NCBI GenBank assembly: GCA_044892505.1
Contig: CM097883.1
Coordinates: 315,146,001-315,191,222 of the forward strand
Direction of reading: 5' to 3'
DNA from: Schmidtea nova
Taxonomy: Eukaryota
DNA length: 45,222 bases
The notes under the pieces were generated by a model, which was not told the DNA's origin, made no database searches, and saw nothing but the letters and a program-made list of their open reading frames with translations. This document shows, in pieces, positions 60 through 28,288 of this stretch (position 1 is the stretch's first letter; every line of letters starts with the position of its first letter). The position numbers were made by a program, and so were the translations under genes.

Positions 60-920
60 ACGTTACCAACAGTAGTCATGGGGGTTACACAATGGTGTGT
101 TTATCTTAGCAATAGTTACTTCAGGACTTAAATATTAACATGTGTGGTTACCTTAGCAATAGTTACAGGGAGACTATACTTTAATGTGTGTATTTACCCC
201 GGGACTATATATTGATCTGTGTGTTTACCTTAACTATATCTTCCCCAGGACTATATATTGATGTGTATGTGTTAACTTTAGCAACATCTGGCTATATGAA
301 TATATATATATATATTGATGTGTGTGTGTGTTTACCCTGGAAACAGGTTCCTCAGTGAATATATAATGATGTGTGTGTGTTTACCTTAACTACAGGTTCC
401 TTGGGGACTCTTTATACGCGCGTGTTTATCTTAACAACAGATTCCAATGCATTACACTTTAATGTGCGTATTTACCCTAGCAATATCTTCCCGGTAATTA
501 TATATTAATATGTGTGCTTACCTTAGCAATAACTGCCTCGAGGAATATATTGATGTGTGTGTTTACCCTGGAAACAGGATCCTCGGGGAATATATATTGA
601 TGTGTGTTTACCCTAGCAACACCTGCATTTAGGAATATCTTGATGTGTGTATTTACCTTAGCAACATCTCCCCGGTAATTATATAGTAATGTGTGTTCTT
701 ACCTTAGCAATACCTGTCTCGAGGAATATTTTGATGTGTGTGTGTGTGTTTACCCTAACAACAGGTTCATCGGGGAATATATATTGATGTGTGTGTGTTT
801 ACCCTAACAACAGGTTCATCGGGGAATATATATTGATGTGTGTGCACGTTCACCCTGACAACACCTGAATTGAGGAATATCTTGATGTGTGTATTTACCC
901 TAGCAACCGTTGCTAGTTGA
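60..920. repeat. Degenerate minisatellite, unit about 55-60 bp (TGATGTGTGTGTTTACCYTAGCAAC...GGAATATATAT), roughly 15 copies
   Basis: The block gatgtgtgt(gt)ttaccYtaRcaaY recurs about every 60 bp; the array ends in the palindrome CTAGCAAC-C-GTTGCTAG near 900-916. Confidence 0.8.
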
Positions 921-1660: not shown

Positions 1661-2329
1661 AAAATAAAATCTAATAGTCACATAAAAAATAAAAATCCAA
1701 TATTCATTTGTAGAATGAATACGGTCATGAAAACAATATTGATGATGTTTGAACAATTTCATTCTGAATGTGGTTAGATGGAAATCAGTGATGGACGCTC
1801 TGAAGAGATAACTTTTTCGGCGGCTTGGAATCGTCATAATGCTGTGGAATAATTAACATCAATTTATGAAGTTTAAAATTAATAAACATACCGGTTTTGA
1901 TAAATAAGAAAAATGCCAAAATCTAATGCTGGGAAAATCAAAGCGACAATTGAATTTCCCCAAGGTCGGAATAAAATTTAAACAATAAGAAACTTGTAGG
2001 AATTTAATTATATAAATTATTTAAAACCATAAAATTAGAAAATTCCTACGGTAGAAATGAAATTATTTTCGTAAATTAAAAATTAGAGTTTTTATTTTTT
2101 ATTATAAATGTAAATTAAAATTTTTATTTTAAAATGCTTTAATTGTTAATTAAAATTGATTACAATATTGGTAAAATTTAAAATTATGCTAGTGTTTTTG
2201 ATGCTCGGAATAATTTATTCGGATGCAACAATGAATTTATAATTATGTAGAATGTTTATGTTGAATTTCCGATAAAATTTTGTCGAATACTTAAAGCTAA
2301 ATTATTAAAGGAGGGACAAAATGGGCAAC

Positions 2330-2528
2330 AAACCTTCTATCGGTAGCCCTTGGACCCAGGAGATATTCGGTCAATCATAGTTTCGTATTGACGACGCTCA
2401 CTGGTTGCGAATACCCATCCACTTGTTACAGTACCAACGTTACATAGTGACGGGTAACAAGATGGTAATTTCAATGTTTTATGTGTTGAGTTGTTGATGA
2501 GAGCCATAGAAACGTCAAGGTCATATTG
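2330..2528 (-). repeat. Dispersed ~210-bp repeat, inverted copy, cut by the assembly gap
   Basis: Reverse complement aligns closely with 25891-26103 and 24783-25098 (e.g. GACCGAATATCTCCTGGGTCCAAGGGCTACCGATAGAAGGTTT). Confidence 0.85.
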
Positions 2529-2695
2529 NNNNNNNNNNNNNNNNNNNNNNNNNNNNNNNNNNNNNNNNNNNNNNNNNNNNNNNNNNNNNNNNNNNNNNNN
2601 NNNNNNNNNNNNNNNNNNNNNNNNNNNNNNNNNNNNNNNNNNNNNNNNNNNNNNNNNNNNNNNNNNNNNNNNNNNNNNNNNNNNNNNNNNNNNNN
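2529..2695. other. Assembly gap (N run)
   Basis: Run of N; ORFs crossing it are artefacts. Confidence 1.
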
Positions 2696-3005
2696 TTTTG
2701 TGATACCCAGTGCAAATCTCCAATAGCAGACTAGTTTCGAGCTTTTAGCTGGATAAAACATCACTTGAATATGCAAGGTCCTACAGATAATCTGTAATTT
2801 GCAAACATGGCGTATGAATTTCATTTTCACCTCTGCGCACTAAAAGTGTTCAACAGAAACTGTTTGCAAGCGCACCCGACTGCCTTAGCTTCATTATTTC
2901 AATTTCTTTAAATATCTTTTGAAAAAAACATTTGTCGGATGACTTCTTTGTTTTAAAACAAAAAAAGCTTGGGATTTTTTTTGTGATACCCAGTGCAAAT
3001 CCCCA

Positions 3006-3047
3006 ATAGCAGACTAGTTTCGAGCTTTTGGCTCTCATCAGTGCTAT
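3006..3047 (-). ncRNA. Type I hammerhead ribozyme with minimal palindromic stem III
   Basis: Minus strand: ATAGCA-CTGATGA-GAGC-CAAAA-GCTC-GAAA-CTAG-TC-TGCTAT. Stem I is ATAGCA/TGCTAT, the core is CUGAUGA...GAAA, stem II is GAGC/GCUC, and the GUC cleavage triplet gives a cut between 3012 and 3011. Confidence 0.92.
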
Positions 3048-3050
3048 GCA

Positions 3051-3087
3051 GGAGACGCGAAAATTTCTCTCCGCGCCAGGTAAGTAT
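3051..3087 (-). ncRNA. U1 snRNA-like 5' segment fused upstream of the hammerhead
   Basis: Minus strand starts ATACTTACCTGGCGCGGAGAG, the conserved U1 5' end, followed by a GGAGA/TCTCC stem. No 70K loop or Sm site seen, so it is not a full U1. Confidence 0.65.
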
Positions 3088-3387
3088 AAAACAAAGTCGA
3101 AAGATTTTGTTATATACTATACCTGGTACACTGGATAAAACATCACTTGAATATGCAAGGTCCTACAGATAATCTGTAACTTGCAAACATGGCGTATGAA
3201 TTCCATTTTCACCTCTGCGCACTAAAAGTGTTCAACAGAAACTGTTTGCAAGCGCACCCGACTGCCTTAGCTTCATTATTTCAATTTCTTGAAATATCTT
3301 TTGAAAAAAACATTTGTCGGATGACTTCTTTGTTTTAAAACAAAAAAAGCTTGTGATTTTGTTTGTGATACCCAGTGCAAATCCCCA

Positions 3388-3429
3388 ATAGCAGACTAGT
3401 TTCGAGCTTTTGGCTCTCATCAGTGCTAT
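3388..3429 (-). ncRNA. Type I hammerhead ribozyme, second intact copy
   Basis: Identical to 3006-3047, 382 bp away. Confidence 0.92.
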
Positions 3430-3432
3430 GCA

Positions 3433-3469
3433 GGAGACGCGAAAATTTCTCTCCGCGCCAGGTAAGTAT
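3433..3469 (-). ncRNA. U1 snRNA-like 5' segment, second copy
   Basis: Plus strand CCAGGTAAGTAT at 3458-3469, identical to the first copy. Confidence 0.65.
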
Positions 3470-3769
3470 AAAACAAAGTCGAAAGATTTTGTTATATACT
3501 ATACCTGGTACACTGGATAAAACATCACTTGAATATGCAAGGTCCTACAGATAATCTGTAACTTGCAAACATGGCGTATGAATTTCATTTTCACCTCTGC
3601 GCACTAAAAGTGTTCAACAGAAACTGTTTGCAAGCGCACCCGACTGCCTTAGCTTCATTATTTCAATTTCTTGAAATATCTTTTGAAAAAAACATTTGTC
3701 GGATGACTTCTTTGTTTTAAAACAAAAAAAGCTTGTGATTTTTTTTGTGATACCCAGTGCAAATTCCCA

Positions 3770-3805
3770 ATAGCAGACTAGTTTCGAGCTTTTGGCTCTC
3801 ATCAG
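3770..3805 (-). ncRNA. 5'-truncated hammerhead (lacks the 5' arm of stem I)
   Basis: Array homology begins exactly at CTGATGAG; upstream is unrelated AT-rich DNA. Confidence 0.8.
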
Positions 3806-4587: not shown

Positions 4588-5064
4588 TCAACAATTTTTT
4601 AATAAAACTGTTTCTTCTTCAGTTGGATCTTGAATTTGTTGATCTGTATTGAGTATTGGATCGGTATGTTTAAATATAACCAAGTCACTTCCCATATAAT
4701 GACCATACGCCAAGATTTTATTTTTTATTACCCATTTCCTTTTATCATCCGCATTTGTCAGTGCAGTCTTTTCATTTTCAATAGTGAATAGCTGATGATT
4801 TTTATTTGTGATTCTCGTTTGGGGAACAGAAAATATTTGGTTATTATTAAAACAATCCAGGTACGACTGATGCTTTATGTCAATACCCTTCAATGTTATC
4901 TCTTTAGCTTTTTTAGTTTCGTCATCTCCTAAAAGACTATAACATTTCGGTCCAAGAAACACCCACACTTCGTACTTAAGCTCTTTATTCTCGTCTTTGA
5001 ACCTCTCGATGACAGAATCAAGATTCCTAATGTATAAAGGGTGATTTAGATCATAATTTTCAGA
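4588..5064 (-). pseudogene. Relic of a Polinton pPolB C-terminus
   Basis: ENYDLNHPLYIRNLDSVIERFKDE...WVFLGPKCYSL...HQSYLDC...DDKRKWV...LAYGHY aligns to the C-terminus of the intact pPolB near 44.1-44.5 kb (SNYDPMDPLYNINLDSVIGKFKDE...WVFLRPKCYSL). Confidence 0.9.
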
Positions 5065-5965
5065 TATTATTACAAGTGATATTTCAAATCCCTAGACTCT
5101 TAAAATGAATTAAAATATTTCTTTATTTAAACTAATTTATTACCAAATATTCATATAAAAATATTAAACATTTTTATATACTTTATGCAGTAATTTAATT
5201 ATTTATCCTTGTCGGTATCGTAAAATCTATACATTTTACTGTAATATGACTTATAAAATATCATGTAATTGTTATTAATAATTAATTATGTTAAAATATT
5301 AAATTTTATAAATTCTTTACTTAATTTTATTTATTAAATGATCAATTAATTATTAATTATAATTCACACCAAATTATAATTATTCTTTCATAAATTATTC
5401 TAAATTAAAGAAAACTTTGTTAAATAATTATTTAGTTTTTCAATCTTTGATATAATTTCTAAAATATTTTTTTTGACAAAAATGTAATAATGGATTAACA
5501 TTTAGTTAAAACTGCAAAGAATACATCAAAATCTCCTGTGATATTAATTTTTTATTACAAATTCATAAACATTCATTACTATCGTTTTACCAGAATATAT
5601 TGAATATTTTACATTGTTTTTTAGACATTGTAGTAAGTAACAATAAATCTCATCAAAATGATAATAAAGCAAAAGTAAATTGTTTTATTATCCTAACTAA
5701 TTGATAAAAACTTATTGAATTTCTTTCAAGTACTGATGATTCTTCATATTTTATCATTAATCTATACCAAACTTTATCGATAATTTACACATTATTTATT
5801 ACGTTCACTAATACACATGCAACTTGATTGTAAAAGATTTTAATCCAAGAAAATAACGACAATATAATAAATTTATCAAGAAAACGTTTATAGCATTGAA
5901 ATTGTACTAAATATTTAATTCTGACCGGACTGAAACAAATTATCGAATCACAAAAATAGATTTTA

Positions 5966-7029
5966 CAGGGTTTCTATTGCAATTTAATCTCTTTTAAATG
6001 CAATTTAATCTTTTTTAAATCCACTTTAATCCTTTTAAAATCCAATTTAATCTTTTTAAAATCCAATTTAATTAAGATGTGAAAAATAATTAAAAAAATT
6101 TAAAACAGATTAAAAATGCTCTCTTTTTAGGGCCCGCACAGCAAAAGTTCTTACATGATTGAAAAACCACGTACAATCAGATTCAGTAATTCTTGTCATC
6201 GTTGACATTATTGCGGCTACCAACTCATCCACTGTGTTTGGATTGGTAGTTTTGATGAGGGATTTCCATTTCGAGAATACCTCAATAGGATTTAATTGAG
6301 GGCTATATGGCGGAAGAAACATTAATTCATGCCCGGCAGCTGCTATAATTGTACAAACTTCTTCCCCCTGCAGTTATCAAGTACTCGATCGGGTTGAGCA
6401 ACTTATTTCAAACTTATCCAGAAAAACGACATTATCATCATTTAGTTCCAAATATCTCCCCGCGTATTGAAAACGAACTTCAATATTTGCATCTGTATTT
6501 CTTCTTTCCGGAATTAACGCAATGCGTTTAAATGTATAATGAAAACTTTTTATAGCCTTATCAATTATTGGGATGGAACATATAATATTCAATTCCGCAG
6601 CCAGTTTTATTCTCAGTGCGTCCAATGTAATCGATACATCTTCGTCTATTTTAGAATGTATAAATACCTTTGCATTTTCGGTTATAATGCTTTCAACTGG
6701 CATTCTTGTTGCAATTCTCGCCATTCTACCTGTGTTCTTGAAGACTCTGATAACTGAAGCTACCGTTTTCGAGTTTAATTCAAGTTCTGCGGCTATTTGT
6801 CCAGGATTTTTATTATCCACATACTTTCGGATTATTAAGGCACGTTCATTGTCTGTAATTCTACGTGATTGAGTTTCTCTTGCTGGCATAATTATTATAG
6901 AAATAAATTGGATTTAAAAATGGTTAAATTGGATTTTAAAAAGATTAAATTGGATTTTAAAAGGATTAAATTGGATTTAAAAAAGATTAAATTGCATTTA
7001 AAAGAGATTAAATTGCATTAAAAACCCTG
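5966..7029 (-). mobile_element. Tc1/IS630-superfamily DNA transposon, internally deleted (1064 bp)
   Basis: TA|CAGGGTTT...AAACCCTG|TA ends; TIRs of about 105 bp built from a 21-bp unit; transposase remnant inside. Confidence 0.9.
6110..6889 (-). pseudogene. Tc1/IS630-like transposase, deleted and with stop codons
   Basis: N-terminal HTH-like region, VVFLD (first catalytic D), tandem TGA TAA, then in-frame FLPPYSPQLNPIE. The region around the second D (DNA..H motif) is absent. Confidence 0.88.

Positions 7030-7032
<3 letters not shown>

Positions 7033-7084
<52 letters not shown>
7033..7084. repeat. (AT)n microsatellite
   Basis: About 26 AT units right next to the transposon end. Confidence 0.95.
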
Positions 7085-7086
<2 letters not shown>

Positions 7087-7283
7087 CATTTATTCATCTT
7101 CATTTTAGTTTAATATCTTTTAAATATATCACAATTTTATTTTAGATAGTGTTGGGTTGTGGATGGGTTAAATAAAATTATTCTAGGGACTCCTCTATCC
7201 ATACCCACATATAAAATGCATACGTTACACACACGCATCCTCGACTGTTTCCCTGGATAGTCGAGTTGGAAATGTGCAAGGTT

Positions 7284-8799
7284 TGATGAACCGGAAACCA
7301 CACCAAGGTATTCTGATTTTTGGCGTGGTTGCCGATTCATCAATTTTATATTTGTTCCCTCGCTTATCATTTTACATAAGCTTACAAATAAATCTAAATC
7401 TACTTTTGTTTTCGAATGTCTGTAGTTGGTATTCAGCTTACGGCAATTTGTTAACATATACTCAGTCATGCCAAATAGCAGGGAAAGAAGAATTCCAGGC
7501 CGAACCAAAGATCGATCGAAATCATCGGGTAATCCCCCAAGGAGGATCTCATAAGGAGGTTCCACTGCCGGCTTGCTTATTAGAAAGTACTTGTCCAATC
7601 ACTCGGATCGTGTAGATATAATTGTCAGAAAATGTAATATTTATTTGATAACCAGTTTCTATATAAATCTTAATTGTATCACTTTTCTTTATTAATTGAT
7701 TGAAAGAGACATTGAAAAATCTGTAAAATTTAAGAATAAGATTGGAAACATAACACCAAGTTTTGGAAATGTCTGTGAAAATATCAAACATGCAGTTTAC
7801 CAAAATTTCATGAATAAAAATAAAAGGAGGTCTCAAAGATTGAATAACCATATAAAAATGATACACACATGGATTTGATTGTATAGCATGATAAACCATT
7901 TTTCTATTACTAAACTTTCATCAGTATCTTTCCACCTTACCGGATAAAAATAATTGAAATTAGAATGATGAAATTCAGGAAACACTCCAAAGTCATACGA
8001 TATAATATACAATTTAATGAATGACAAAATGCATGGGAAATCAATTTTTGGATTCTGGACAAAAACTTCATTTGTGAAGATATTGTATGCGCATGGTGAG
8101 GAGCAATTTATTTGAGTACCTTTAAATAGTTCTCTCGATCTTGGAATAATTAGATCTAAATGTTTTTTAAAATAAAATCCTTGCTCATTAAAGCTAACTA
8201 AGCAGCGGCATGTAATACTTGATTTTACCCAGGACGTGCTTGCCTTCGAAAACCTTCCTCTGACATTAAAGTGATATGATATATAGTTTATTCTATCAAT
8301 CAGAAAGTTTACGATTACGACGGAGTCTTTGAGAGCAACCCAATGTAGGAGCGACAGATCCGTACCTTCCGTAATGATTATTTTTACTTCTATCGGATCT
8401 AGGAACTCTACTGATCTTTCGAATCTCGCGTCATCATCTGCGATAATATATGCGAACCATAAACGTCGCTTTGCTGATTCTTCTATATATTCTTCATTCA
8501 ACATTTTATTCAAATGATATTTCGGTAATCTATATTTGATATTATAATATATTTTTAAATTAGAATTTAAAAAGTCGAATTTCAAGCGATTTCAAATATT
8601 TATTTTATATTATCGTGCGGGTTAACCGCTTAACAACCTCTTTTAACAAAACATACAATGTTGAAATTATAAAATTTTTACATATATAACAATTTTTTTA
8701 CAACCTTAATTTACATAATTTTAAATATACATGAGACACGAATAAACATTTATTTATGTTAAAAATTCATATCCAAACGTGTGTCCACAGAACATTACA
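7284..8799 (-). repeat. 3' LTR (1516 bp)
   Basis: Offset of 6435 from 13719-15234; only two substitutions noticed by eye. Confidence 0.95.
7833..8504 (-). CDS. LTR-internal ORF (223 aa from ATG) with one ankyrin-like motif, 3' LTR copy
   Basis: 250 open codons in AT-rich DNA; SLLHWVALKDSVVIVNFLID resembles an ankyrin repeat consensus. Confidence 0.4.
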   Translation of the reverse strand: MLNEEYIEESAKRRLWFAYIIADDDARFERSVEFLDPIEVKIIITEGTDLSLLHWVALKDSVVIVNFLIDRINYISYHFNVRGRFSKASTSWVKSSITCRCLVSFNEQGFYFKKHLDLIIPRSRELFKGTQINCSSPCAYNIFTNEVFVQNPKIDFPCILSFIKLYIISYDFGVFPEFHHSNFNYFYPVRWKDTDESLVIEKWFIMLYNQIHVCIIFIWLFNL

Positions 8800-8802
8800 T
8801 TA

Positions 8803-8812
8803 CCCCCCATCC
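8803..8812 (-). promoter_or_regulatory. Polypurine tract
   Basis: Minus strand GGATGGGGGG, 3 nt upstream of the 3' LTR TG. Confidence 0.8.
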
Positions 8813-8880
8813 AGTAACGCGGAGCGTTTTTCTTAAAAAAAAAAATTTTTAGAAGTGTTAGTATTGGTGCTCGCCCTAAG

Positions 8881-11800
8881 TTACAAGTCGTTAGTTCTAG
8901 ATAGGCGGATTGGTAAGTTCGGGTTTTCGCCGATTCTTTTAGTTCGGTGCCATTCTGCTATACGCACTTTCTTAATTTGTTGTGCCTTGGGTATCTTATT
9001 TGATGATTTTAGGATGGGGTTCGGAGTATATTTTGAAGTAGGAGTTGATTGAGTTGGCTGGTCCAATATAGTTGCCGGGATAAACCATGTGTTATCTGGT
9101 TGCGATGATTGTGTTGGTCTCTGAATTGGAATTTGCTTCTGGTTAGCTATTGGTTGTAATGTGCTGGGTAATGGGTTTTCGATTTGTAACTGGGTGGTGG
9201 AGTGATTAGTTATGAGGGATGGAATGATTTCATTTTTGATTGGAAGTAATTTCGGTGATGATAAAAATTGCTGAGGTAAGCGAACGACGGTCGGGTTATC
9301 CCTCTGCAGATTATGGGTTTGTATGGGGTCCGGAGGATTTGGTGGTGTGAAGTCTTGTGTCTCAGCATGCGATGTGATATTTGCAGGACTGAGGTCTTCT
9401 TCCATATAACCAAAAGCTGGCTTGAGACGGGCTAGATTTATAATTGAATCCATTCCATTAATGGAAACTTTTGCAGTGCCGTTATCAAGTATTTGGAGAA
9501 GGGAATACGGTCCTTCGTAGCGTAGTTTTAGGCCAATATCGGCAATTGAACGGATCCATACATGAGTTGCGCGATCAAAAGATCTGGGAATATATGGTTT
9601 GTAAGTGTTCGACATTGAAAAGTTTGGGTTTGAGTCCAAAGATAGGAAATGGTTAGTTGCATCCGCTAGATTTTCTAAAGTTGGTTCGCCGTTTAGCTCG
9701 ACAAGTTCGTTTGGTAACATGACGTTAGTACCGAACAGGAGTTGAGCTGGAGACGAACCGGTTGTTTTTGATGGCGTATTGCGCCATCCTAGTAGCACAA
9801 AAGTAGGGTCTTTGTCCAGTTCTTTGAAGTTGAAAGTATTCGGAGGGATGTCTTGAGTGTGCGGTGAAACCGCTCGACAGCTCCGTTTGTTTGTGGGTGG
9901 TAGGTACTAGTCCTCAGGTGTTTAATTCCTAGTTGTGTCAAAAGTTGTTTAAAAAGATGGGATTCGAATTGGGGTCCTTGATCGGTAATGAAATGTAGAG
10001 GAACGCCAAATATCGAGATCCAATGTTCTATGATCGCCGATGCTACAATATAGGCAGAAATGGATTTTAAAGGAACATCGACTGGAAAACGAGTTTTTCT
10101 GTCCAGCATGGTTAGTATATGTGTGTAACCGTTGTCTGGAGGAAGAGGTCCAACTAGATCGACATGCACCACTTCAAAACGGTTTCCCGTTGGAAAGTTA
10201 TGTAAGGGTGGTCGAGTATGTCTGTGGATTTTGTGTTGTTGGCATCCTAAGCAAGATTCACACCAGTCTTTTATGTCTTGTCTCATACTTGGCCAAATGA
10301 CACGAGAACGTAGTAGATTATATGTTGCAGACGTGCCCGGATGGTGAAGGTTGTGGGTGTGGTTGAAAGCTTCGCGCCTTAACTTTTCTTGCAAAATTGG
10401 GCGGATATTTCCAGATAAGGCGTTGTCGTAGTAGATGCCTTTATCGAAAACCGTTGTATTTTGGAAGAATGACAGGTCTCTTGGGGAAGGTGGTAGAGAC
10501 CTGAGGACGTCGTCAGTGAAGATCGGCTCAGTAGTGATCGCTGCAACAAGATTTCGCGATAGATAATCTGCTACAATATTCTGGCGACCTGGAAGATGAG
10601 TGATAGTGAACGCGAATTCTGATAGGTAGCTAATTTGACGTCCCTGTCTTGGTGAAGGAGTCTTCATTTCCATCATGTGAACTAGAGGTTTATGGTCCGT
10701 CTGAATAGAAAAAGATCTGCCTTCGAGTAGGTAGCGGAAGTGGCGGACTGATTCATATATCGCTAACAATTCGCGGTCAAACGTGGAATTGCATTGTTCC
10801 TGTGTGGTTAATTTGCGTGAAAAGAATTCGATTTTCTCTTGACAACCTGTGTTGTTCTGCTCGAGAACTCCAGCAATGCCAATGTTGGACACATAGGTAG
10901 TTAAAAATAGGGGTAGATTGTTCTTTATGTAGGACAAAGATTGTGCTGTAGACATTGCGTCCTTGACGGATTGAAAAGCTCTTTCCAGTTCGTCATTCCA
11001 CGGTAGGAGAGAGTGTTTTGGGCCGCTACAGAGAGCGGAAAGAGGTGCGGTGACCTCAGATATCCTTGGAATAAATCGGTGACAGAAATTAACAGTTCCT
11101 AAGAAGCTGCGCATTTGGGAAACTGTATTTGGTCGTGAAAAATTGCGGATTGTATCTAGGCGTTCTGGAAGTGGTCTTACTCCGGACGTCGATACGAGGT
11201 GTCCGAGGAATTTTATTTCCGATTGAAAGAAGGAACATTTGTCCAAGTTAATTTGCAAATTGTTATTGTGCAATAACCTGAACACTTCTTTGATATGTTC
11301 AAGATGTTCCGTTGCATCTTTGGACCCGATGAGGATGTCATCGATGTATGCCACCATGTATTTCTTGTCCCCTAAAATATTGTCAATGTGTCGCTGGAAC
11401 GTTTGAGCTGCGTTTCGGAGACCGAATGGCATGTATTTGTATTCAAACAAGCCGAAAGGGGATTTGGTGGTAAGCCTTTTTTAGATCTAGGGTGGAGAAG
11501 ATTGTAGCTTCAGGTAATCTCGAAAGAACGTCTGATATAAGTGGCATGGGGTAAGAGTCATGTATAGTGACTTTGTTGAGGCGTCTGTAGTCACCACAGG
11601 CGCGGATAGATCCGTCTTTTTTTGTAACCACATGGATGGGTGATGCCCAAGGGGAATTCGATCGGTGGATAGTACCGGCTTCGAGTAGCTTATTGAATTC
11701 TTCCTTGACAAGTGTGAGTTTCTCGGGCGCGAGTGGTCGCATACGTTCTCTGTTAGGCATACCGTTATTGATGACTATGACGTGTAGAAAAGAGGGAGTT

Positions 11801-12320
11801 TGTTTGTGATTGTTTGATCTCTTTTCGACGTTTGGAAATGTCTTTAGTAATTGTTGTATATAGCAAGGTGTGGCGGGTAAGACATTGAGAGCGTCGCTAC
11901 AGAGGTGGTCAAGAACTTGAGCTCTAGGTGTGTGTTGTGAGAGGATTAATTTGCGTTCTCTGCAATCAGGGAGTAAACCTTCAGCATCAAGAAAATCGGC
12001 ACCTAAGAGTGGATGAATCACCTCGGCGACTTGGAATGTCCATGAAAAAGTTTTAGACAGACCAGGAATTTGGAATATTAAGTTTTTGGTTCCAATAGTG
12101 GAAAAGTTTTCGCCACTGGCTGTCCGGAAAGACATTTTTTGATTATTATCAATTCCGAACCGATTAGGTAGGAATGAAATGATAGAGCCGCTATCGATAA
12201 CGAAGTGAATGGGGGCATCGACTTCGTTAGAGTTCTGGGAATGAGGTACGGCGGAAACAGAAAAGAGTCCACAGGTTATGGGATCGCCATCAAAAACTGT
12301 GGGGGAGTTCGATGGCGTCT
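8881..12320 (-). pseudogene. pol: pol (protease-RT-RNase H-integrase), broken by two frameshifts
   Basis: PR FVIDSGS; RT WASPIHVV, LDLKKAYHQI, MPFGLRNA, YIDD; IN HHCC, VHVD, TDQG, NGAVER. About 41 nt deleted near 11460, 1 nt deleted near 9803, and RNase H TDAS changed to TYVS near 10893. Confidence 0.95.
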
Positions 12321-13307
12321 TCAGTTTTCCGAAGACTTATTATATGAATTTTGATTAACGTTACTGGTATTGTGATTACCAGTATGGAAACGGCAGCCTT
12401 CCAAGCATGTTTTGGCCTCGGTCTTAAATATTGCGTGATAGATGCAAAGGTTGCGAGGCAGGCATGTTGGAAGTCGGTTGTTCCACCTACAACCGACATA
12501 GCAATGTTGGGCTTTGTCTCCATACGTCTTATGGTAGGAGCATATGAGCCCTCGTGCAGACGTGGACCGATGTCGTTTTTGATTGTTGTCACGACTGTCT
12601 GTTCGACTTCGACCTCGGGTGTGTAGACTTGCGTCTAAATTGTCCATCCTCGATGTTAAAGCAGCTATGGCGCTGACTAGGGCTCCGAATTCGGCGTGTG
12701 GGAGGCTTGTTGTTGCGACTACTGGTGATGGAGTATCGGGTGACGTGTTGATTTCCACGATCTTGTCGGCAATTTTGGCCAGTTCTTCCAATGTTGTGTT
12801 TGGAACAACGGCCAGAATGGACTGGGCTGATGTAGGTAGTGCTTTTAGAAAGAACCTACGGAGCAGAGCGTCGTCTTTGGTAAGACCAGCCTGGATCCTT
12901 TCGAGTTGTTCCTTGGCTCGCTTGAGGAAGGCGCTTGGTCTTTCATTATTGAGGGGTTGATTTCGGAACCAAGCCTCATATAAATGGTCTAATTTTGGTC
13001 GGTAGGCGTCTAGCACTGCCGATTTCAGTGAGTTGTAGGGCTCACTTGCCGTGGCTGCGGTTGCAATGGCGGTGGACAATGTGGTGTAAATAGTGCTTGG
13101 AAGCATGGACAAGAGTGCACCAAACTTCTGCCCTTGAGATTGAGTGGGTAGAAAGGTTGGAGTCACTTCTAGTGCCAGGAACCACGTTTGTGGGGAGCCA
13201 ACGCCGTCTAGGAAAAACGGTATTGGGGTAATAACTGGTGTTGTTTGTTGTGTTGGCGGTTGTATGTGACTGATTTCACAGTCTGTGTTAGTCTCATCAG
13301 TTTGCAT
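12321..13307 (-). CDS. gag: Gag (about 328 aa from MQTDE; the frame stays open upstream to 14033)
   Basis: PFFLDG..PQTWF...KF..L..LP...PY..LK..VL capsid-like region; two CxYH..(F/Y)..xA..C...C knuckles; ends at TCG GAA AAC TGA with pol in the -1 frame. Confidence 0.9.
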   Translation of the reverse strand: MQTDETNTDCEISHIQPPTQQTTPVITPIPFFLDGVGSPQTWFLALEVTPTFLPTQSQGQKFGALLSMLPSTIYTTLSTAIATAATASEPYNSLKSAVLDAYRPKLDHLYEAWFRNQPLNNERPSAFLKRAKEQLERIQAGLTKDDALLRRFFLKALPTSAQSILAVVPNTTLEELAKIADKIVEINTSPDTPSPVVATTSLPHAEFGALVSAIAALTSRMDNLDASLHTRGRSRTDSRDNNQKRHRSTSARGLICSYHKTYGDKAQHCYVGCRWNNRLPTCLPRNLCIYHAIFKTEAKTCLEGCRFHTGNHNTSNVNQNSYNKSSEN

Positions 13308-13702
13308 TCCTCCAGTCAAACGGGGAACGATGTCGAAATAGGTGGTGATGACTGGGGTATGTGTCGCAGATTGGGACTTCTTGACAAAGAAGTGGCGGTG
13401 TGTTTCTCTTGGGACACCAATTGCTAGGAGCAATGAAGACATTGAGGACAATTGTGACTTCGTCGGAAACAGAGGTTGCCATCCGGAAGTCTTGTTAGGA
13501 CACCGGAAGAGAAATTTGTGTGATACTTGCGTCCTCTCAATGTTTAAAAACCCGTTTGTTCTTATGATGTGGTTTCCATGTACCTTCAATATAGTTAGTC
13601 CCGCCCAGGATTGTAGCGCCTTCATTTGGGAAGGAATAGGAAAAATAATAAATGTGGGAATATAATAATATAAAATATAAATGTTACTGGAGGGAGGGAG
13701 TA

Positions 13703-13715
13703 ACTTCTGACACCA
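13703..13715 (-). promoter_or_regulatory. Primer-binding site, probably tRNA-Leu
   Basis: TGGTGTCAGAAGT, 3 nt downstream of the 5' LTR; complementary to the 3' end of eukaryotic tRNA-Leu(CAA), ACUUCUGACACCA. Confidence 0.85.
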
Positions 13716-13718
13716 ATT

Positions 13719-15234
13719 TGATGAACCGGAAACCACACCAAGGTATTCTGATTTTTGGCGTGGTTGCCGATTCATTAATTTTATATTTGTTCCCTCGCTT
13801 ATCATTTTACATAAGCTTACAAATAAATCTAAATATACTTTTGTTTTCGAATGTCTGTAGTTGGTATTCAGCTTACGGCAATTTGTTAACATATACTCAG
13901 TCATGCCAAATAGCAGGGAAAGAAGAATTCCAGGCCGAACCAAAGATCGATCGAAATCATCGGGTAATCCCCCAAGGAGGATCTCATAAGGAGGTTCCAC
14001 TGCCGGCTTGCTTATTAGAAAGTACTTGTCCAATCACTCGGATCGTGTAGATATAATTGTCAGAAAATGTAATATTTATTTGATAACCAGTTTCTATATA
14101 AATCTTAATTGTATCACTTTTCTTTATTAATTGATTGAAAGAGACATTGAAAAATCTGTAAAATTTAAGAATAAGATTGGAAACATAACACCAAGTTTTG
14201 GAAATGTCTGTGAAAATATCAAACATGCAGTTTACCAAAATTTCATGAATAAAAATAAAAGGAGGTCTCAAAGATTGAATAACCATATAAAAATGATACA
14301 CACATGGATTTGATTGTATAGCATGATAAACCATTTTTCTATTACTAAACTTTCATCAGTATCTTTCCACCTTACCGGATAAAAATAATTGAAATTAGAA
14401 TGATGAAATTCAGGAAACACTCCAAAGTCATACGATATAATATACAATTTAATGAATGACAAAATGCATGGGAAATCAATTTTTGGATTCTGGACAAAAA
14501 CTTCATTTGTGAAGATATTGTATGCGCATGGTGAGGAGCAATTTATTTGAGTACCTTTAAATAGTTCTCTCGATCTTGGAATAATTAGATCTAAATGTTT
14601 TTTAAAATAAAATCCTTGCTCATTAAAGCTAACTAAGCAGCGGCATGTAATACTTGATTTTACCCAGGACGTGCTTGCCTTCGAAAACCTTCCTCTGACA
14701 TTAAAGTGATATGATATATAGTTTATTCTATCAATCAGAAAGTTTACGATTACGACGGAGTCTTTGAGAGCAACCCAATGTAGGAGCGACAGATCCGTAC
14801 CTTCCGTAATGATTATTTTTACTTCTATCGGATCTAGGAACTCTACTGATCTTTCGAATCTCGCGTCATCATCTGCGATAATATATGCGAACCATAAACG
14901 TCGCTTTGCTGATTCTTCTATATATTCTTCATTCAACATTTTATTCAAATGATATTTCGGTAATCTATATTTGATATTATAATATATTTTTAAATTAGAA
15001 TTTAAAAAGTCGAATTTCAAGCGATTTCAAATATTTATTTTATATTATCGTGCGGGTTAACCGCTTAACAACCTCTTTTAACAAAACATACAATGTTGAA
15101 ATTATAAAATTTTTACATATATAACAATTTTTTTACAACCTTAATTTACATAATTTTAAATATACATGAGACACGAATAAACATTTATTTATGTTAAAAA
15201 TTCATATCCAAACGTGTGTCCACAGAACATTACA
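13719..15234 (-). repeat. 5' LTR (1516 bp)
   Basis: Direct repeat of 7284-8799. Confidence 0.95.
14268..14939 (-). CDS. LTR-internal ORF with ankyrin-like motif, 5' LTR copy
   Basis: Protein identical to that of 7833-8504. Confidence 0.4.
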   Translation of the reverse strand: MLNEEYIEESAKRRLWFAYIIADDDARFERSVEFLDPIEVKIIITEGTDLSLLHWVALKDSVVIVNFLIDRINYISYHFNVRGRFSKASTSWVKSSITCRCLVSFNEQGFYFKKHLDLIIPRSRELFKGTQINCSSPCAYNIFTNEVFVQNPKIDFPCILSFIKLYIISYDFGVFPEFHHSNFNYFYPVRWKDTDESLVIEKWFIMLYNQIHVCIIFIWLFNL

Positions 15235-19200: not shown

Positions 19201-19319
19201 AAATTCATTCAGAAATGTATCTCATATTCATATGAAAACGTATTCCAAATCACCATAATTTATTCAAAGATTTTATTAAAATTCAAACAAGTGGGCAAAA
19301 TAAAGTATGCCAATCTTTA

Positions 19320-20400
19320 AATTTTGAATCAAACCATTTTATAGAAAAATAAAGTTTAAACTTACAATATTGCAATAAAAATTCAATAAAGTTACTGTAC
19401 ATATGTAAAAATGTAAAATTTAATTAATAATTATATATGTAACACAAAACAAAACTTTTAAACTATGAATCAAGCCATTTTATAGAAAATTAAAATTTAT
19501 CTATACTTTATTACAATCGAACATCAATAAAATTACTTCATTTAGATGGAAATACAAAAATTAATAACAAAACACATGTGCCTCACAAAATTCGACCAAC
19601 CAAATTTTCAATCAAGCCATTTTTGTATAAAATTAATTTTTACACACATTTTATTACAATAAAAACTCAGTAAAATAATTTGAAATAGTTGAAACTTACA
19701 ACTTTAATAACAAAACACATGTGCAACACAAAACACGACAACTTTCAAATTTCTAATCAAGTCATTTTAAAGAAATTTAAATTTTCCACTTTAAATATTA
19801 CAATAAAAATTCAATAAAGTTACTGTATATATGTGAAAAATACAAATTTTAATACAAAACACGCATGCACCACAAATTCGACAAATTTCTAATCAATTCA
19901 TTTTATAACAATTTATATTTTATATATACTTTATTACAATGGAAACGCAATGAAACTGTTTTAAATAGGTGAAAAAATAAAAGTTTTAATACACAACCGG
20001 TATGCAACACGAAGTACGACAACTTTCAAATTTCTAATCAAACCAATTTATAGAAAATTAAATTTTACACTTACAATATTACAATAAAAATTCAATAAAG
20101 TTACTGTATATATGTGAAATATACATATTTTAATACAAAACACGGATGCGTCACAAAATTCGACAAATTCTTTATTTCTAGTCAAGTCATATTATAAAAA
20201 TATAAATACATTATTACAATAAAAACTCAATAAAGTTAATTTAAATGGGTGAAAAATACAAATTTTTAAATTAAACACGCGTGTAACACGAAATACGGTA
20301 ACTTTTAAATTTTAAATCAAACCATTTTATTGGAATTTAAATATTACACACTTTATTACAATGATAAAACTCAATAAAGTTACTTTATATAGATGAAATA
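19320..20400. repeat. Degenerate tandem repeat, about 140 bp x8
   Basis: aatcaaRccattttat anchors near 19327, 19468, 19610, 19755, 19891, 20036, 20180 and 20315. Confidence 0.8.
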
Positions 20401-20753
20401 TGGAAATTCTGTCGATAACGTTGATGAATTCGAGTACAGAGATGACGGGAAGTTTCTCCAATTTATGTCGCATTACATCTATTACATGTAAATTGATAAA
20501 CGATTGATAAAAATTATTTAAATACATATTTACTTTGTTTTAATAAATGGAATTATACTGTTTTTTCTGGATGTCTATTACCTGGAATTACAGGGAGTCT
20601 GTTAAAATATATAATACGATGGTTATATCAGTGGCATTTTTTAAAATTAAATATTTGCCATGTTTACTTAAGTATTTATTTAAAAATCAATTTAATCTTC
20701 ATAAAAAATCTCCAGTTAAAACAAAGAATTAGGAAACCCTTTCCAAAGTATAT

Positions 20754-23700
20754 TTATAAAATAATTTTCACTAAGCACTTGACAGTGAATTTATCAGCCA
20801 CAAGTGATGCAGGTGAAGGTGAATATTCGAGAATTTTAACATCTCCAGAATAGCAACCGTTATAAGTAATAATTTGTTTATTACTGACAGAAAATTCTTG
20901 CGTTGCCTCATTCCAAATTCCCAGAGTAATATCTAATTTGACAGGATATATTTGATAACTGTTATATGTTCCATAGACCAGTGATATAGAAATATTATAA
21001 TAGCTATATTCACAATCTACCTCAATTTGTAATTTGTATCCATTCGGATGGGTATAAAATTCATCACTTCGTACTGTCATTTTCGTACTGTCAATCTTAC
21101 AAACTTCAAATTTGAATTCTTTAGCAAACGTATTAAAAATTTGATTCAATTGCAGTTTCATATCTACAATTTCTTTTGCCTGTTTATCCAAGGCGGATTT
21201 CAATGCCTGCTGCTGAGTGACCTTGATGGAATTAGCAAATGTTACCAATAAATCCGTTTCTCACTTGAATATTTTTTAGCTTATCATTTATATCGTTCTT
21301 TTCTCGTTGAAGCTTTTCCAACTGTGTCTGCAATTATTCAGTAATTAATTGCTAAAAATTCAAAAGAAATGTTTTGATTAAATGGCTTTATTCCACGCAT
21401 CCTGTTTGAATCACAGTATTAAAAATTAATAATGTAAAACAAATTTAAATTTCACATAAAAAATTCAAGATAATAACAGCCACTTCTATTTTTTATTATA
21501 ACTAAAAAAAAATTTTTTCGCATTAGCTGTACATTTTGAATTCTTTTACGGTCCGCTAATGTGCCGCGGCACACAGTTTCTGTACCACTGTTTTAGATTA
21601 TAGACTAAATTCTTTCAATTAATCATAAATTTTCAGAACTTTTACAATGGTTATTCTATTCAGGATCAAATAACTGCCGTCACCAAGTGTTTTTATCCGT
21701 GATTAGTCTTCGTTGGTAAGTTAATGTATGCTGATATGAAGAATTATTGGTAGAGCACCTCGAAATTTGTAACATTCCTTGTGAGCGGCATGAGATTGAA
21801 AATTCTTTTAGCTCAATAGTTTAGTAAGTTGTAACTGAAATTTTAATGTAAATGAAATTTGAAGAACTTTTTTTCACAACGCCTACGCTAATGTAAGTAA
21901 ACATAAATTTTTCATGAATAATTAAAAATAAATATTTTTTTAAAAAATGCGGTTAGTCATTAATTAATTATGATAATAAAAATAAATTAAAGTTTACATT
22001 GAAAATCTCGCGGCTTTATAGTGTTTTAGGATTTTCAAACATGGCTTTCCATAGATAAAGCTTTGAGCACACCTGATATAACACATAACAAGAGATTTCA
22101 CAAAGCATAAATAATTTGAGCTATCAAGATTAATCCTTTGGTAAAATACATTTAATATATGTTGGGTATGCTATTAGAAACTGCATTGAATATCACATTA
22201 GAAACTTTATTTCAATCTGTGAGTCAACCGAAAACCAAAAAACAACAATTTGAATCTAAATATTAATAACTATTATAGCATCACATTTATAAAATGCTAC
22301 TCTCTGTCTGTCCATTCCAAAAATTATTATTTATTGATTATTAAAATTATTTTTATTGATTCAAAAATACATTTGGGATATTTACCATTTATATTTGGGC
22401 ATTTTCTGCAGGTTTTAAAATCTTGCATGTCTTATAATGCTCAATAATTTAATCCTTGAAACAGGTGTTGCTGTAAAGGGTATGAATGATGGTATTGGTA
22501 GTAATAATAATAATGAAACAAATAAAAATATTGTGAATGATAGCACGGGTTCCGTTTAGGTTTTATGATTTGAATATATCCAAACCACAAAACCGGGGTT
22601 TTCCGTTTTATCTAAAAATACGTAGAAAAAGAAAAGTTTTTGAACGGGAAGAGAATAATCATCAACATCTGTAAGGGATTAAATTTTGTTCATCATTGAA
22701 AGGATATTTATAGCAAGGCCGGGGTTTTTCGCTTCAACTTTCGGAATATTACATAATTTCATTGGAAGGTCAAAAGGATCAAAAACCGGGTCTGAAATAT
22801 TATAATTATAAGACTTAATTCTATTAAATTTCACCCCCTTGTATTTTAAAATTACCAAAATATTTTATATATAAAACACAAGTTATCGGTACAAGTTACC
22901 AGTACAATGTTTTTTATTTAATGATGCTGGGGTTGAACAAGAACCTTTGCCACTTAATCGTCTTATTTGTGAATATTTTGTAATTTTAAAGCTTATTTCT
23001 TTAATTTTATTAATTGACCAATTGCTGCCATTTTCGGAGACTAGTATTTTTTCACTTAATAGAGCAATACCATCTAAAAAGGTATTATTTATGGGTTTTG
23101 CGGAATTTCATATTATAAAAGATTGAAATTGCCCATCTTTTTCAAATTCTTCATCAGTGCAGAATTGTACTTTTTCATATTCCATTTCAGAAATGACTGA
23201 ATTAAATTTATTTACTAAAGATGGAGGGATAATTAATTAATTTAAATTTAAAGAATTCACATCCATTTTTACAATGGCATGGGAATTTAAACATCATCAT
23301 TTGGTGAATGAACATCTTCATCGGAAATTATAATTATTTTAGCCTGTTTAGGACAATCAGTAACAGTTCGTCGTTTATTTGTACTAATTAATGTGAAGAC
23401 TTTTTAGTGGATGAGAATTGATTTAAATGGAGATAATCTTGAAAATAAAAATCAATATGTTATATTTTGGGCACTCTTACATGTGGGACACAAAAAAGTG
23501 ACTTGGTTATTTATAAGACGATAGTATCATTCCATTAATTTGTGGCAGTCGTTATGATTTGACGAATTACAATAATTCGGATAAAAATTACCTTAAATAT
23601 AAAATGTCTTTAAATTTATCAAAAAATCATTAAAAAAATTAATAAAAATATGAATTATTAGAAAATAAATATGAAATATAAAATAAATATTATTTAAATA

Positions 23701-24782: not shown

Positions 24783-25098
24783 AGGTTGTTGATCATCAAT
24801 ATGACCTTGACGTTGCTAGAAATCACATCAACAACTTAACATATAACGAGATAAATTAACCATCTTGTTGCCCGTCACAATTGGTGGGTAGTTGATGGTC
24901 AATATGACCTTGATGTTGCTGTGGCTCCTATCAACAACTCAACATACAAAACATTAGTTTAACCATCTTATTGCACGTCACAATGTAACATTCGTAATGC
25001 AACAAATGGGTTGATGTCCGCAAACAGTGAGCGTTGAAAAATCGAAACTATGATTGACCGAACATCTCAGTGGGTTCAAGGGATACCGAAAAAGGTTT
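24783..25098 (+). repeat. Dispersed ~210-bp repeat with its first ~110 bp duplicated in tandem
   Basis: GGTTGTTGAT..TCAATATGACCTTGA..ATCAACAACT at 24783 and again near 24885, followed by the shared tail. Confidence 0.85.
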
Positions 25099-25890: not shown

Positions 25891-26103
25891 GGGTTGTTGA
25901 TCGTCAATATGACCTTGACGTTACTATGGATCGTATCAACAACTCAACATACAAAACATTGAAATAGCCATCTTGTTGCCCGTCACAATGTAACGTTGGT
26001 AATGCAACAAATGGGTGGGTATTCGCAATCAGTGAGCGTCGTCAATATGAAACTATGATTGACCGAATATCTCCTGGGTCCAAGGGCTACCGATAGAAGG
26101 TTT
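25891..26103 (+). repeat. Dispersed ~210-bp repeat
   Basis: Aligns with 24885-25098 and with the reverse complement of 2330-2528. Confidence 0.85.
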
Positions 26104-28155: not shown

Positions 28156-28288
28156 NNNNNNNNNNNNNNNNNNNNNNNNNNNNNNNNNNNNNNNNNNNNN
28201 NNNNNNNNNNNNNNNNNNNNNNNNNNNNNNNNNNNNNNNNNNNNNNNNNNNNNNNNNNNNNNNNNNNNNNNNNNNNNNNNNNNNNNNN
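28156..28288. other. Assembly gap (N run)
   Basis: Run of N. Confidence 1.

What the first reader, a model, noticed from the sequence alone, without database searches (positions are those of the whole stretch)
2696..3805. Tandem 382-bp array with an intact hammerhead ribozyme in each complete unit (retrozyme-like)
Seen: the minus strand reads ATAGCA CTGATGA GAGC CAAAA GCTC GAAA CTAG TC TGCTAT, with every core nucleotide and stems I and II. Stem III is reduced to the palindrome ACTAGT. Known: type I hammerheads with a palindromic mini-stem III cleave as dimers and occur in newt satellite 2, schistosome Sm-alpha repeats, Penelope-like elements and metazoan non-LTR retrozymes. Inference: multimeric transcripts would be cut into 382-nt monomers that could circularise. 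The ORF track's repeated 62-aa ORFs mask this non-coding element.
Basis: partly seen in the sequence, partly recalled or inferred. Interest (0 to 1): 0.85.

Follow-up and report, generated by a model that had tools for sequence, protein, structure and literature searches.

The report
Tandem repeat carrying hammerhead ribozymes
A 382-bp DNA repeat whose RNA copy carries a self-cutting hammerhead ribozyme; it is the kind of element ('non-LTR retrozyme') already known from newts, axolotl, mussels and corals, so it is a sound but ordinary example.

Summary
Bases 2696-3805 hold a head-to-tail array with a 382-bp period at 98-99% identity. An assembly gap cuts it on the low side.

On the minus strand the array carries two complete type I hammerhead motifs, at 3429-3388 and 3047-3006. 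Both have every core nucleotide, a 6-bp helix I, a 4-bp helix II with a G-C first pair, and a helix III reduced to the palindrome ACUAGU. Two further ribozyme copies are incomplete.

Rfam's Hammerhead_1 model finds both complete copies, but below its curated cut-off (27.6 against 34 bits). My strict descriptor found 2 hits in the window and 0 in 2000 simulated windows.

The 382-nt monomer folds far better than shuffles (z about -6). The repeated 62-aa ORF starts at the AUG inside the CUGAUGA box and has no true homologue.

This matches the published definition of a canonical metazoan type I hammerhead and of non-LTR retrozymes.

Untested here: transcription, cleavage, circles, genome-wide copy number and covariation. 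I found no further copy in any collection I could reach.

Verdict: new member of a known kind, modest interest.

The parts
2696..3805 (-). Visible part of the tandem array (382-bp period). The low end runs into an assembly gap; the high end is the true edge of the array.
3394..3775 (-). Full repeat unit, counted from one predicted cleavage site to the next.
   Evidence: 99.2% identical to the next unit; circular fold -116.6 kcal/mol, 71% paired.
3012..3393 (-). Full repeat unit between the two complete ribozymes. This is the one monomer bounded by two intact cleavage sites.
   Evidence: linear fold -122.2 kcal/mol (z -6.2); circular fold -117.3 kcal/mol (z -6.06); GC 37.7%.
3388..3429 (-). Complete type I hammerhead ribozyme. 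Predicted cleavage after GUC, between 3394 and 3393.
   Evidence: RF00163, 27.6 bits, E 2.8e-4; descriptor hit.
3006..3047 (-). Complete type I hammerhead ribozyme. Predicted cleavage between 3012 and 3011.
3776..3805 (-). Edge stub of the array. This ribozyme copy is cut short by the array boundary: it has the catalytic boxes, helix II and helix III, but its helix I partner strand is replaced by flanking DNA.
   Evidence: One search gives only a weak HH9 hit here (17 bits).
2696..3011 (-). Partial unit material next to the gap, holding one incomplete ribozyme copy (one internal deletion).
2529..2695 (.). Run of 167 N (assembly gap) that hides the other end of the array.
3232..3420 (-). 62-aa ORF, repeated at 2850-3038 and 3614-3802. 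Its start codon is the AUG inside the CUGAUGA box. Judged spurious.
   Evidence: No exact record, no homologue, and only two low-complexity repeat proteins from the 1.84-billion library.

Best explanation
The array is a non-LTR retrozyme, equivalently a hammerhead-bearing satellite of the newt satellite-2 type. It is a non-coding 382-bp unit repeated head to tail, and its minus-strand transcript carries a canonical metazoan type I hammerhead at each unit junction.

Shown here:
- the repeat;
- the complete ribozyme motif, twice;
- the palindromic helix III;
- a monomer RNA that folds far better than chance, with helix I closing the folded body;
- the lack of any credible protein.

Inferred from published work on the family:
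- A transcript spanning several units is made.
- Helix III is too short for one motif to fold stably, so two neighbouring motifs pair through ACUAGU/ACUAGU into a double hammerhead.
- Each active site cuts after GUC, releasing 382-nt monomers with 5'-hydroxyl and 2',3'-cyclic phosphate ends.
- A host RtcB-type tRNA ligase closes them into circles.
- The circles are thought to be copied back into DNA in tandem by a reverse transcriptase supplied in trans, with Penelope-like elements as the suspected partner.
For: - Repeat.
- Motif. All core positions match the Rfam Hammerhead_1 consensus, and loop 2 begins CAAA as in that consensus.
- Chance: 0 hits in 2000 simulated windows; 6.6e-5 expected per window.
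- Dimer logic. The double-hammerhead pairing of two 42-mers evaluates to -21.6 kcal/mol. A single motif gives -8.1 kcal/mol without helix III, and -2.4 kcal/mol with a one-pair helix III.
- Self-paired monomer: (z about -6, 71% paired, GC 37.7%).
- Non-coding.
- Literature: PMC4209133 defines the canonical metazoan motif and its dimeric action. PMC7229834 defines non-LTR retrozymes, reports RtcB-mediated circularisation, and describes an axolotl ribozyme (HHR_Amex1) with the same helix III layout. The bioRxiv preprint 10.64898/2026.07.22.740005 links such repeats to Penelope-like elements.
Against: - The Rfam score is below the curated cut-off (27.6 against 34 bits).
- Only two of four ribozyme copies at this locus are complete.
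- No other copy exists in the window.
- No copy was found in viral, metagenome or prokaryote-genome collections, or in the paper library. Conservation and covariation therefore could not be tested.
- The units differ by only 3 substitutions, which gives no power.
- No Penelope-like reverse transcriptase lies in the 45-kb window.
- Target-site duplications cannot be read because one end is in the gap.
- There are no expression data.
Confidence: 0.8

Rival explanations
1. This is a dead relic. The repeat descends from a retrozyme or satellite family, but this locus is silent: a short, partly damaged array that is not transcribed, so nothing is cleaved or circularised here.
For: - Two of four ribozyme copies are incomplete.
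- The array lies among transposon debris: a polymerase B fragment, a Tc1/mariner-like piece and an LTR element.
- No promoter could be identified. There is no tRNA-like part and no B box in the array.
Against: - The units are 98-99% identical and the two complete ribozymes are flawless, which suggests recent amplification or homogenisation.
- Published families are abundantly expressed (PMC7229834).
Confidence: 0.3
2. This is a fragment of a Penelope-like element. The units would be tandem terminal repeats (pLTRs) of a truncated autonomous element rather than a separate non-autonomous repeat.
For: - Penelope-like elements carry type I hammerheads with a small palindromic helix III in their terminal repeats and insert in partial tandems (PMC4209133).
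- Retrozymes in Xenopus resemble such termini.
Against: - No reverse-transcriptase or GIY-YIG ORF lies next to the array. The only RT in the window is Ty3/Gypsy-type, about 3.5 kb away.
- At least three successive 382-bp units have no coding insert.
- The ribozyme has the canonical 6-bp helix I and 4-bp helix II. The minimal Penelope type described has a helix II of 7-8 bp, a helix I of 4-5 bp and an extra unpaired base before helix II.
Confidence: 0.07
3. This is a chance motif. An ordinary satellite unit happens to contain a hammerhead-like string that tandem duplication then copied.
For: - The two complete motifs are one event copied, not independent.
- About 1.5 descriptor hits are expected by chance per Gb.
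- The score is below the Rfam cut-off.
Against: - The expectation per window is 6.6e-5, with 0 hits in 2000 simulated windows.
- Several features not in the descriptor also fit: the palindromic helix III, loop 2 matching the consensus, the G-C first pair of helix II, helix I closing a strongly folded 340-nt body, and a unit size within the family's range.
Confidence: 0.03
4. The repeat encodes a small 62-aa protein, and the ribozyme-like string is a by-product.
For: An ATG-started 62-aa ORF recurs in each unit.
Against: - There is no exact record and no homologue in 5.8 billion clusters.
- The only hits among 1.84 billion representatives are two unrelated low-complexity repeat proteins.
- ORFs of similar size occur in other frames and on the other strand.
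Confidence: 0.01

Closest known systems
Amphibian satellite 2 / axolotl retrozyme Rtz_331 with ribozyme HHR_Amex1 (PMC7229834)
   Same: - A tandem repeat of about 330 bp with a type I hammerhead at each junction.
- Helix III is a single A-U pair capped by a palindromic tetraloop. In the construct shown the six bases are ACAUGU; here they are ACUAGU.
- Helix II is 4 bp with an A-rich loop.
- The motif is weak alone and cleaves well as a dimer.
   Different: - The unit here is 382 bp and AT-rich (37.7% GC), in a roughly 30% GC genome that looks invertebrate.
- I saw no sequence similarity outside the ribozyme core. The comparison was by eye only, because the published constructs have no reference I could align.
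- PMC7229834 says invertebrate retrozyme ribozymes mostly have a more stable helix III and cleave as monomers. An amphibian-style helix III here would be slightly unusual if the host is an invertebrate.
Mussel (Mytilus galloprovincialis) non-LTR retrozymes, 350-390 bp (PMC7229834)
   Same: Same size range, low GC, tandem arrangement, type I hammerhead and a highly self-paired monomer.
   Different: The mussel ribozyme in the supplement has different helices and a longer helix III. It is not the same family.
Minimal hammerheads in the terminal repeats of Penelope-like elements (PMC4209133)
   Same: Type I topology, a tiny palindromic helix III, dimeric action and occurrence in head-to-tail copies.
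   Different: Those motifs have a helix II of 7-8 bp, a helix I of 4-5 bp and an extra base before helix II, and they flank an RT/GIY-YIG ORF. None of this is seen here.
Plant LTR retrozymes (PMC4918200)
   Same: Non-autonomous, hammerhead-processed, giving circular RNAs with a rod-like or branched fold.
   Different: The plant elements have type III hammerheads inside LTRs of about 350 bp, a primer-binding site, a polypurine tract, 4-bp target duplications and 600-1000 nt circles. Here the hammerhead is type I, there are no LTRs and the array is a simple tandem.
Schistosome Sm-alpha SINE-like repeats (named from my own knowledge; no sequence used)
   Same: A repeat of about 330 bp with a type I hammerhead.
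   Different: Sm-alpha is described as a SINE-like element with an RNA polymerase III promoter. No tRNA-like part and no B box within 2 mismatches occur in this unit.

Membership tests
Hammerhead ribozyme, type I (canonical metazoan form, PMC4209133; Rfam RF00163) | Conserved core: CUGANGA, GAAA, the A15.1-U16.1 pair, and a cleavage nucleotide that is not G | tested here: met
   CUGAUGA, GAAA, A...U and C17 are all present in both complete copies.
Hammerhead ribozyme, type I (canonical metazoan form, PMC4209133; Rfam RF00163) | Open helix I of about 6 bp (type I topology) | tested here: met
   Six Watson-Crick pairs. In the fold they are followed by an internal loop and a second 6-bp stem.
Hammerhead ribozyme, type I (canonical metazoan form, PMC4209133; Rfam RF00163) | Helix II of 4 bp starting with G10.1-C11.1, closed by a loop | tested here: met
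   GAGC/GCUC with a 5-nt loop, CAAAA.
Hammerhead ribozyme, type I (canonical metazoan form, PMC4209133; Rfam RF00163) | Helix III of 1-2 bp capped by a 2-4 nt palindromic loop, allowing a double hammerhead | tested here: met
   ACUAGU is self-complementary. The double-hammerhead pairing evaluates to -21.6 kcal/mol, against -2.4 kcal/mol for a single motif with a one-pair helix III.
Hammerhead ribozyme, type I (canonical metazoan form, PMC4209133; Rfam RF00163) | Score at or above Rfam's gathering cut-off | tested here: not met
   27.6 bits against 34. The alignment shows that positions of the model's helix III and its loop are missing here.
Hammerhead ribozyme, type I (canonical metazoan form, PMC4209133; Rfam RF00163) | Loop 1-loop 2 tertiary contact | tested here: inconclusive
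   Loop 2 begins CAAA as in the Rfam consensus, and an internal loop sits after 5-6 bp of helix I. The contact itself cannot be judged from one sequence.
Hammerhead ribozyme, type I (canonical metazoan form, PMC4209133; Rfam RF00163) | Self-cleavage | not testable with these tools
   No RNA data or assay is available.
Non-LTR retrozyme (PMC7229834) | Type I hammerhead inside a short tandem repeat of about 150-450 bp, in several head-to-tail copies | tested here: met
   The period is 382 bp. Parts of four units are visible and the array continues into a gap.
Non-LTR retrozyme (PMC7229834) | No LTRs and no coding capacity | tested here: met
   The array is a simple tandem, and its ORFs have no homologues. 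A primer-binding site and polypurine tract were not searched for.
Non-LTR retrozyme (PMC7229834) | GC below 50% | tested here: met
   37.7%.
Non-LTR retrozyme (PMC7229834) | Monomer RNA with a stable, highly self-paired structure | tested here: met
   Circular fold of -117.3 kcal/mol, 71% paired, z -6.06. Linear fold z -6.2.
Non-LTR retrozyme (PMC7229834) | Target-site duplications longer than 4 bp, when present | tested here: inconclusive
   One end of the array lies in the N gap, which I did not fill.
Non-LTR retrozyme (PMC7229834) | Many dispersed copies in the genome | not testable with these tools
   There is no second locus in the window and there are no hits in the reachable collections. 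The host genome is not among them.
Non-LTR retrozyme (PMC7229834) | [quoted passage not shown] | not testable with these tools
   No RNA data.
Non-LTR retrozyme (PMC7229834) | Co-occurrence with Penelope-like elements in the same genome | tested here: inconclusive
   None lies in these 45 kb. The criterion applies to the whole genome.
Minimal hammerhead of Penelope-like element terminal repeats (PMC4209133) | Helix II of 7-8 bp, helix I of 4-5 bp, an unpaired base before helix II, and flanking an RT/GIY-YIG ORF | tested here: not met
   Helix II is 4 bp, helix I is 6 bp, there is no extra base, and there is no such ORF nearby.
Plant LTR retrozyme (PMC4918200) | Type III hammerheads within two LTRs | tested here: not met
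   The topology is type I and there are no LTRs.
tRNA-derived SINE with hammerhead (Sm-alpha type) | An internal RNA polymerase III promoter (A and B boxes) or a tRNA-like part | tested here: not met
   ARAGORN finds nothing, and no B box within 2 mismatches lies inside 2696-3805. The A box was not searched.

The most novel reading that the evidence does not exclude
In this host the repeat does not depend on Penelope-like elements. No such element lies in the window. The array sits about 0.8 kb downstream of a Maverick/Polinton polymerase B fragment on the same strand, and about 3.5 kb from a very young Ty3/Gypsy element. It might therefore be carried or copied by a different partner. Separately, its amphibian-style helix III, which requires a dimer, in what looks like an invertebrate genome would mean that this regulatory design arose or was kept outside vertebrates.
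Probability: 0.05. Interest if true: 0.55.

Novelty: new member of a known kind. Interest (0 to 1): 0.3.

Why it matters
The case shows that a functional-looking ribozyme repeat can slip under Rfam's curated cut-off and be hidden by spurious ORF calls. Annotation pipelines that rely on gathering scores will miss this class.

For biology it adds one more family to the non-LTR retrozymes, which are sources of abundant small circular RNAs in animals. It does not change the picture of how they work.

It would be more interesting if the host proved to lack Penelope-like elements, or to lie outside the groups where such repeats are catalogued.

Tried and rejected
1. Rfam at gathering threshold found nothing. 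In E-value mode on the whole window the Hammerhead_1 hits did not appear, and only weak HH9 hits did (24.1 bits, E 0.099). They appeared only when the 1.2-kb stretch was searched alone.
2. My first descriptor script returned 0 hits even in the window, because its regular expression reported one parse per start position. I discarded that count and rewrote the scan.
3. The search for other copies failed everywhere:
   - exact look-up of the 62-aa ORF;
   - word-indexed protein search;
   - a ribozyme pattern in viral contigs, metagenome contigs and prokaryote genomes;
   - a 22-nt pattern from the body of the unit in metagenome contigs;
   - the ribozyme string in the paper library and in the supplements of PMC3088659. 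PMC4209133 has no supplement held.
4. A full HMMER pass over 1.84 billion representatives returned two proteins made of short low-complexity repeats. I rejected them as unrelated.
5. Organism identification failed. Five window ORFs are absent from the protein collection by exact look-up. I spent no further large searches on it, so the host is described only as an AT-rich eukaryote that is probably an invertebrate animal. The pointers are TRAF-like gene pieces, a histone-type stem-loop, and Maverick/Polinton, Ty3/Gypsy and Tc1/mariner elements.
6. The published retrozyme constructs were compared by eye over the ribozyme only. They have no reference, and I did not type them into a tool.
7. The N gap was not filled, and other copies of the flanking repeat were not used to guess its content.

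Full report
**Observation**

Tandem Repeats Finder reports an array at 2749-3805 with period 382, 2.8 copies and 98% matches. A blastn of one unit against the whole window shows:
- two full units, 3012-3393 and 3394-3775, 99.2% identical (3 substitutions);
- a 30-nt stub at the high edge, 3776-3805;
- partial unit material from 3011 down to 2696.

At 2696 a run of 167 N (2529-2695) begins. The array is therefore open on that side and its true size is unknown. No other copy of the unit lies in the 45 kb.

**The ribozyme**

In standard hammerhead numbering each complete copy has:
- the box CUGAUGA (C3 to A9);
- a 4-bp helix II, GAGC/GCUC, whose first pair is G10.1-C11.1, closed by the loop CAAAA;
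- GAAA (G12 to A15.1);
- the six bases ACUAGU, in which A15.1 and U16.1 can pair;
- C17 as the cleavage nucleotide;
- a helix I of six Watson-Crick pairs whose two strands lead out of the motif, which is the type I topology.

The complete copies are at 3429-3388 and 3047-3006. Cleavage is predicted between 3394/3393 and 3012/3011, so one 382-nt monomer (3393 down to 3012) is bounded by two intact sites.

Two more ribozyme copies are incomplete. One is cut by the edge of the array and lacks one strand of helix I. The other has lost part of the motif through a single internal deletion.

**Database models and chance**

At Rfam's gathering thresholds nothing in the window is reported. In E-value mode on the 1.2-kb stretch, Hammerhead_1 (RF00163) matches both complete copies end to end at 27.6 bits against a cut-off of 34, with E 2.8e-4. 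The printed alignment shows agreement at every core position and in the first bases of loop 2. Positions of the model's helix III and its loop are absent here. On the whole window only a weaker HH9 match appears (24.1 bits, E 0.099).

My strict descriptor asks for the core, a 6-bp helix I, a 4-bp helix II and the first two pairs of helix III. It finds the two array copies and nothing else. It finds nothing in 2000 simulated windows, about 90 Mb scanned on both strands. An earlier version of the script was faulty and its count is discarded.

From base composition the expectation is 6.6e-5 per window and about 1.5 per Gb. The two copies are one event duplicated, so they count once. Features outside the descriptor argue further against chance: the palindromic helix III, loop 2, and the fold described below.

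**RNA fold**

- The monomer taken from cleavage site to cleavage site folds to -122.2 kcal/mol as a linear RNA. Shuffles average -85.7 (z -6.2).
- As a circle it folds to -117.3 kcal/mol with 71% of bases paired (z -6.06).
- In these folds the 3' strand of helix I at the start of the monomer pairs with the 5' strand of helix I near its end, closing the folded body. Helix II also forms.
- Past helix I there is a small internal loop and a further 6-bp stem. This is where canonical type I hammerheads carry loop 1.
- A single motif with a one-pair helix III evaluates to -2.4 kcal/mol, and to -8.1 kcal/mol with no helix III. Two motifs arranged as a double hammerhead, with a 6-bp ACUAGU/ACUAGU helix III, evaluate to -21.6 kcal/mol.

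**Coding potential**

A 62-aa ORF recurs at 2850-3038, 3232-3420 and 3614-3802. Its start codon is the AUG inside CUGAUGA.
- It is not on record.
- It has no homologue in the word-indexed search of 5.8 billion clusters.
- A full HMMER pass over 1.84 billion representatives returned only two proteins made of short low-complexity repeats, which I regard as unrelated.

Similar small ORFs occur in other frames and on the other strand. The element is best read as non-coding.

**Relatives**

I found none. A ribozyme pattern with free helix II positions gave no match in viral contigs, metagenome contigs or prokaryote genomes. A 22-nt pattern from the body of the unit gave none in metagenome contigs. 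The ribozyme string is absent from the paper library and from the supplements of PMC3088659. Five other ORFs of the window are also absent from the protein collection, so the host genome is probably not represented there.

Conservation of the core across diverged copies, and covariation in the helices, therefore remain untested. This is the main weakness of the case. The copies in the window show no substitution inside the complete ribozymes, but with 3 differences between full units this has no power.

**Surroundings**

The window is about 30% GC and full of mobile DNA:
- About 0.8 kb upstream of the array on the same (minus) strand lies a C-terminal fragment of a protein-primed-type DNA polymerase B. 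It is 72% identical in DNA to the 3' end of the large ORF of a Maverick/Polinton-like element at the other end of the window.
- Further on lie a Tc1/mariner-like piece and a young Ty3/Gypsy-type LTR element.
- On the other side of the gap lies a short repeat that also occurs at about 24.8-26.1 kb.
- No Penelope-like reverse transcriptase or GIY-YIG ORF is present.
- The unit has no tRNA-like part and no B box within two mismatches.

**Mechanism**

Shown: the anatomy above. Inferred from the published family (PMC4209133; PMC7229834):
1. A transcript covering more than one unit is made from the minus strand. The promoter is unknown.
2. Neighbouring ribozymes pair through the palindrome into a double hammerhead.
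3. Each site is cut after GUC, giving 382-nt monomers with 5'-hydroxyl and cyclic phosphate ends.
4. A host RtcB-type ligase, rather than the ribozyme itself, closes them into circles.
5. The circles may serve as templates for tandem reverse transcription by an enzyme supplied in trans.

In the double-hammerhead geometry each active site is built from strands of two neighbouring copies. An incomplete copy next to a complete one is therefore not necessarily silent. This is untested.

**Comparison with what is known**

PMC4209133 defines the canonical metazoan hammerhead as type I, with a helix I of 6 bp, a helix II of 4 bp and a helix III of 1-2 bp capped by a 2-4 nt palindromic loop. It is inefficient alone and active as a dimer in tandem repeats. 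This motif fits on every count.

[quoted passage not shown] They have low GC, no LTRs and self-paired monomers, and they are expressed as circles of about 170-400 nt. The features testable here are met.

The nearest described ribozyme layout is the axolotl and newt HHR_Amex1, with one pair plus a palindromic tetraloop. The mussel family of similar unit length has a different ribozyme.

It is not the minimal Penelope type, not a plant LTR retrozyme and not a tRNA-derived SINE; the membership table gives the reasons. I did not align the published constructs because they have no reference. That comparison is by eye and covers the ribozyme only.

**Verdict**

This is a new member of a known kind. 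Interest is modest (0.3). The element is real-looking and is missed by threshold-based annotation, but the class, its dimeric ribozyme and its circular RNAs are well described.

Before deciding to treat the array as a virus-like mobile element under the operators' added rule, I printed a table and wrote a note (note 1). Both give the coordinates at which one unit of the array is interrupted. The rule asks for counts rather than places. I have not repeated those places here: the partial material is given as one part, first base to last.

Noticed in passing
window 7282-15234 (minus strand): A Ty3/Gypsy-type LTR retrotransposon with RVT_1, RNase H, Integrase_H2C2 and rve domains. Its two 1518-bp LTRs are 99.87% identical, so the insertion is young. 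The coding region is read as several consecutive ORFs, and the RT domain itself is split over two of them, so there is at least one frame break or an assembly error. Each LTR holds an identical 250-aa ORF with no Pfam match. The breaks were not counted exactly.
   Followed up: partly
window about 29900-45222 (+ strand genes; runs to or past the window end): A Maverick/Polinton-like virus-like element. It holds a Pox_A32-like packaging ATPase, an rve integrase with a chromodomain (read as two ORFs), an adenovirus-type Peptidase_C5, candidate capsid ORFs without Pfam hits, and a 1343-aa ORF with a DTDS motif that looks like a protein-primed polymerase B but has no Pfam hit. No terminal inverted repeat was found inside the window.
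   Followed up: partly
window 32245-32577 (minus strand): A 110-aa ORF with a clear TBP (TATA-binding protein) domain match (E 9e-14) sits inside the Maverick/Polinton-like region. That is an unusual passenger for such an element.
   Followed up: no
window 44752-44797 (+ strand): A near-canonical histone 3' stem-loop (RF00032, 32.3 bits against a cut-off of 34; E 1.4e-5 for the whole window) lies about 255 nt after the stop of the 1343-aa polymerase-like ORF. It may be a histone-type 3' end signal on a mobile-element gene, or a remnant of a neighbouring histone gene.
   Followed up: partly
window about 4588-5040 (minus strand): A fragment matching the C-terminal part of the polymerase B-like ORF (72% DNA identity to 44132-44476) lies about 0.8 kb from the ribozyme array on the same strand. 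It is a remnant of a second Maverick/Polinton-like copy.
   Followed up: partly
window 20754-21248 and 23767-24342 (minus strand): ORFs with weak MATH and RING plus TRAF-type zinc-finger matches. They are probably two exons of a TRAF-like host gene, the only likely host gene seen.
   Followed up: no
window 5956-7040: 117-bp inverted repeats (5956-6071 and 6924-7040, 95.7% identical) flank an ORF with a helix-turn-helix match (6377-6889). This looks like a small Tc1/mariner-type DNA transposon remnant.
   Followed up: no
window 2298-2528, 24797-25098, 25905-26135: A short dispersed repeat family (81-90% identity, opposite orientation) abuts the assembly gap on the far side of the ribozyme array. 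I did not use it to infer the gap's content.
   Followed up: no
window 308-907, 19315-20408, 39663-40531: Several AT-rich minisatellites with periods of about 45, 144 and 50-177 bp. A second N run lies at 28156-28288.
   Followed up: no
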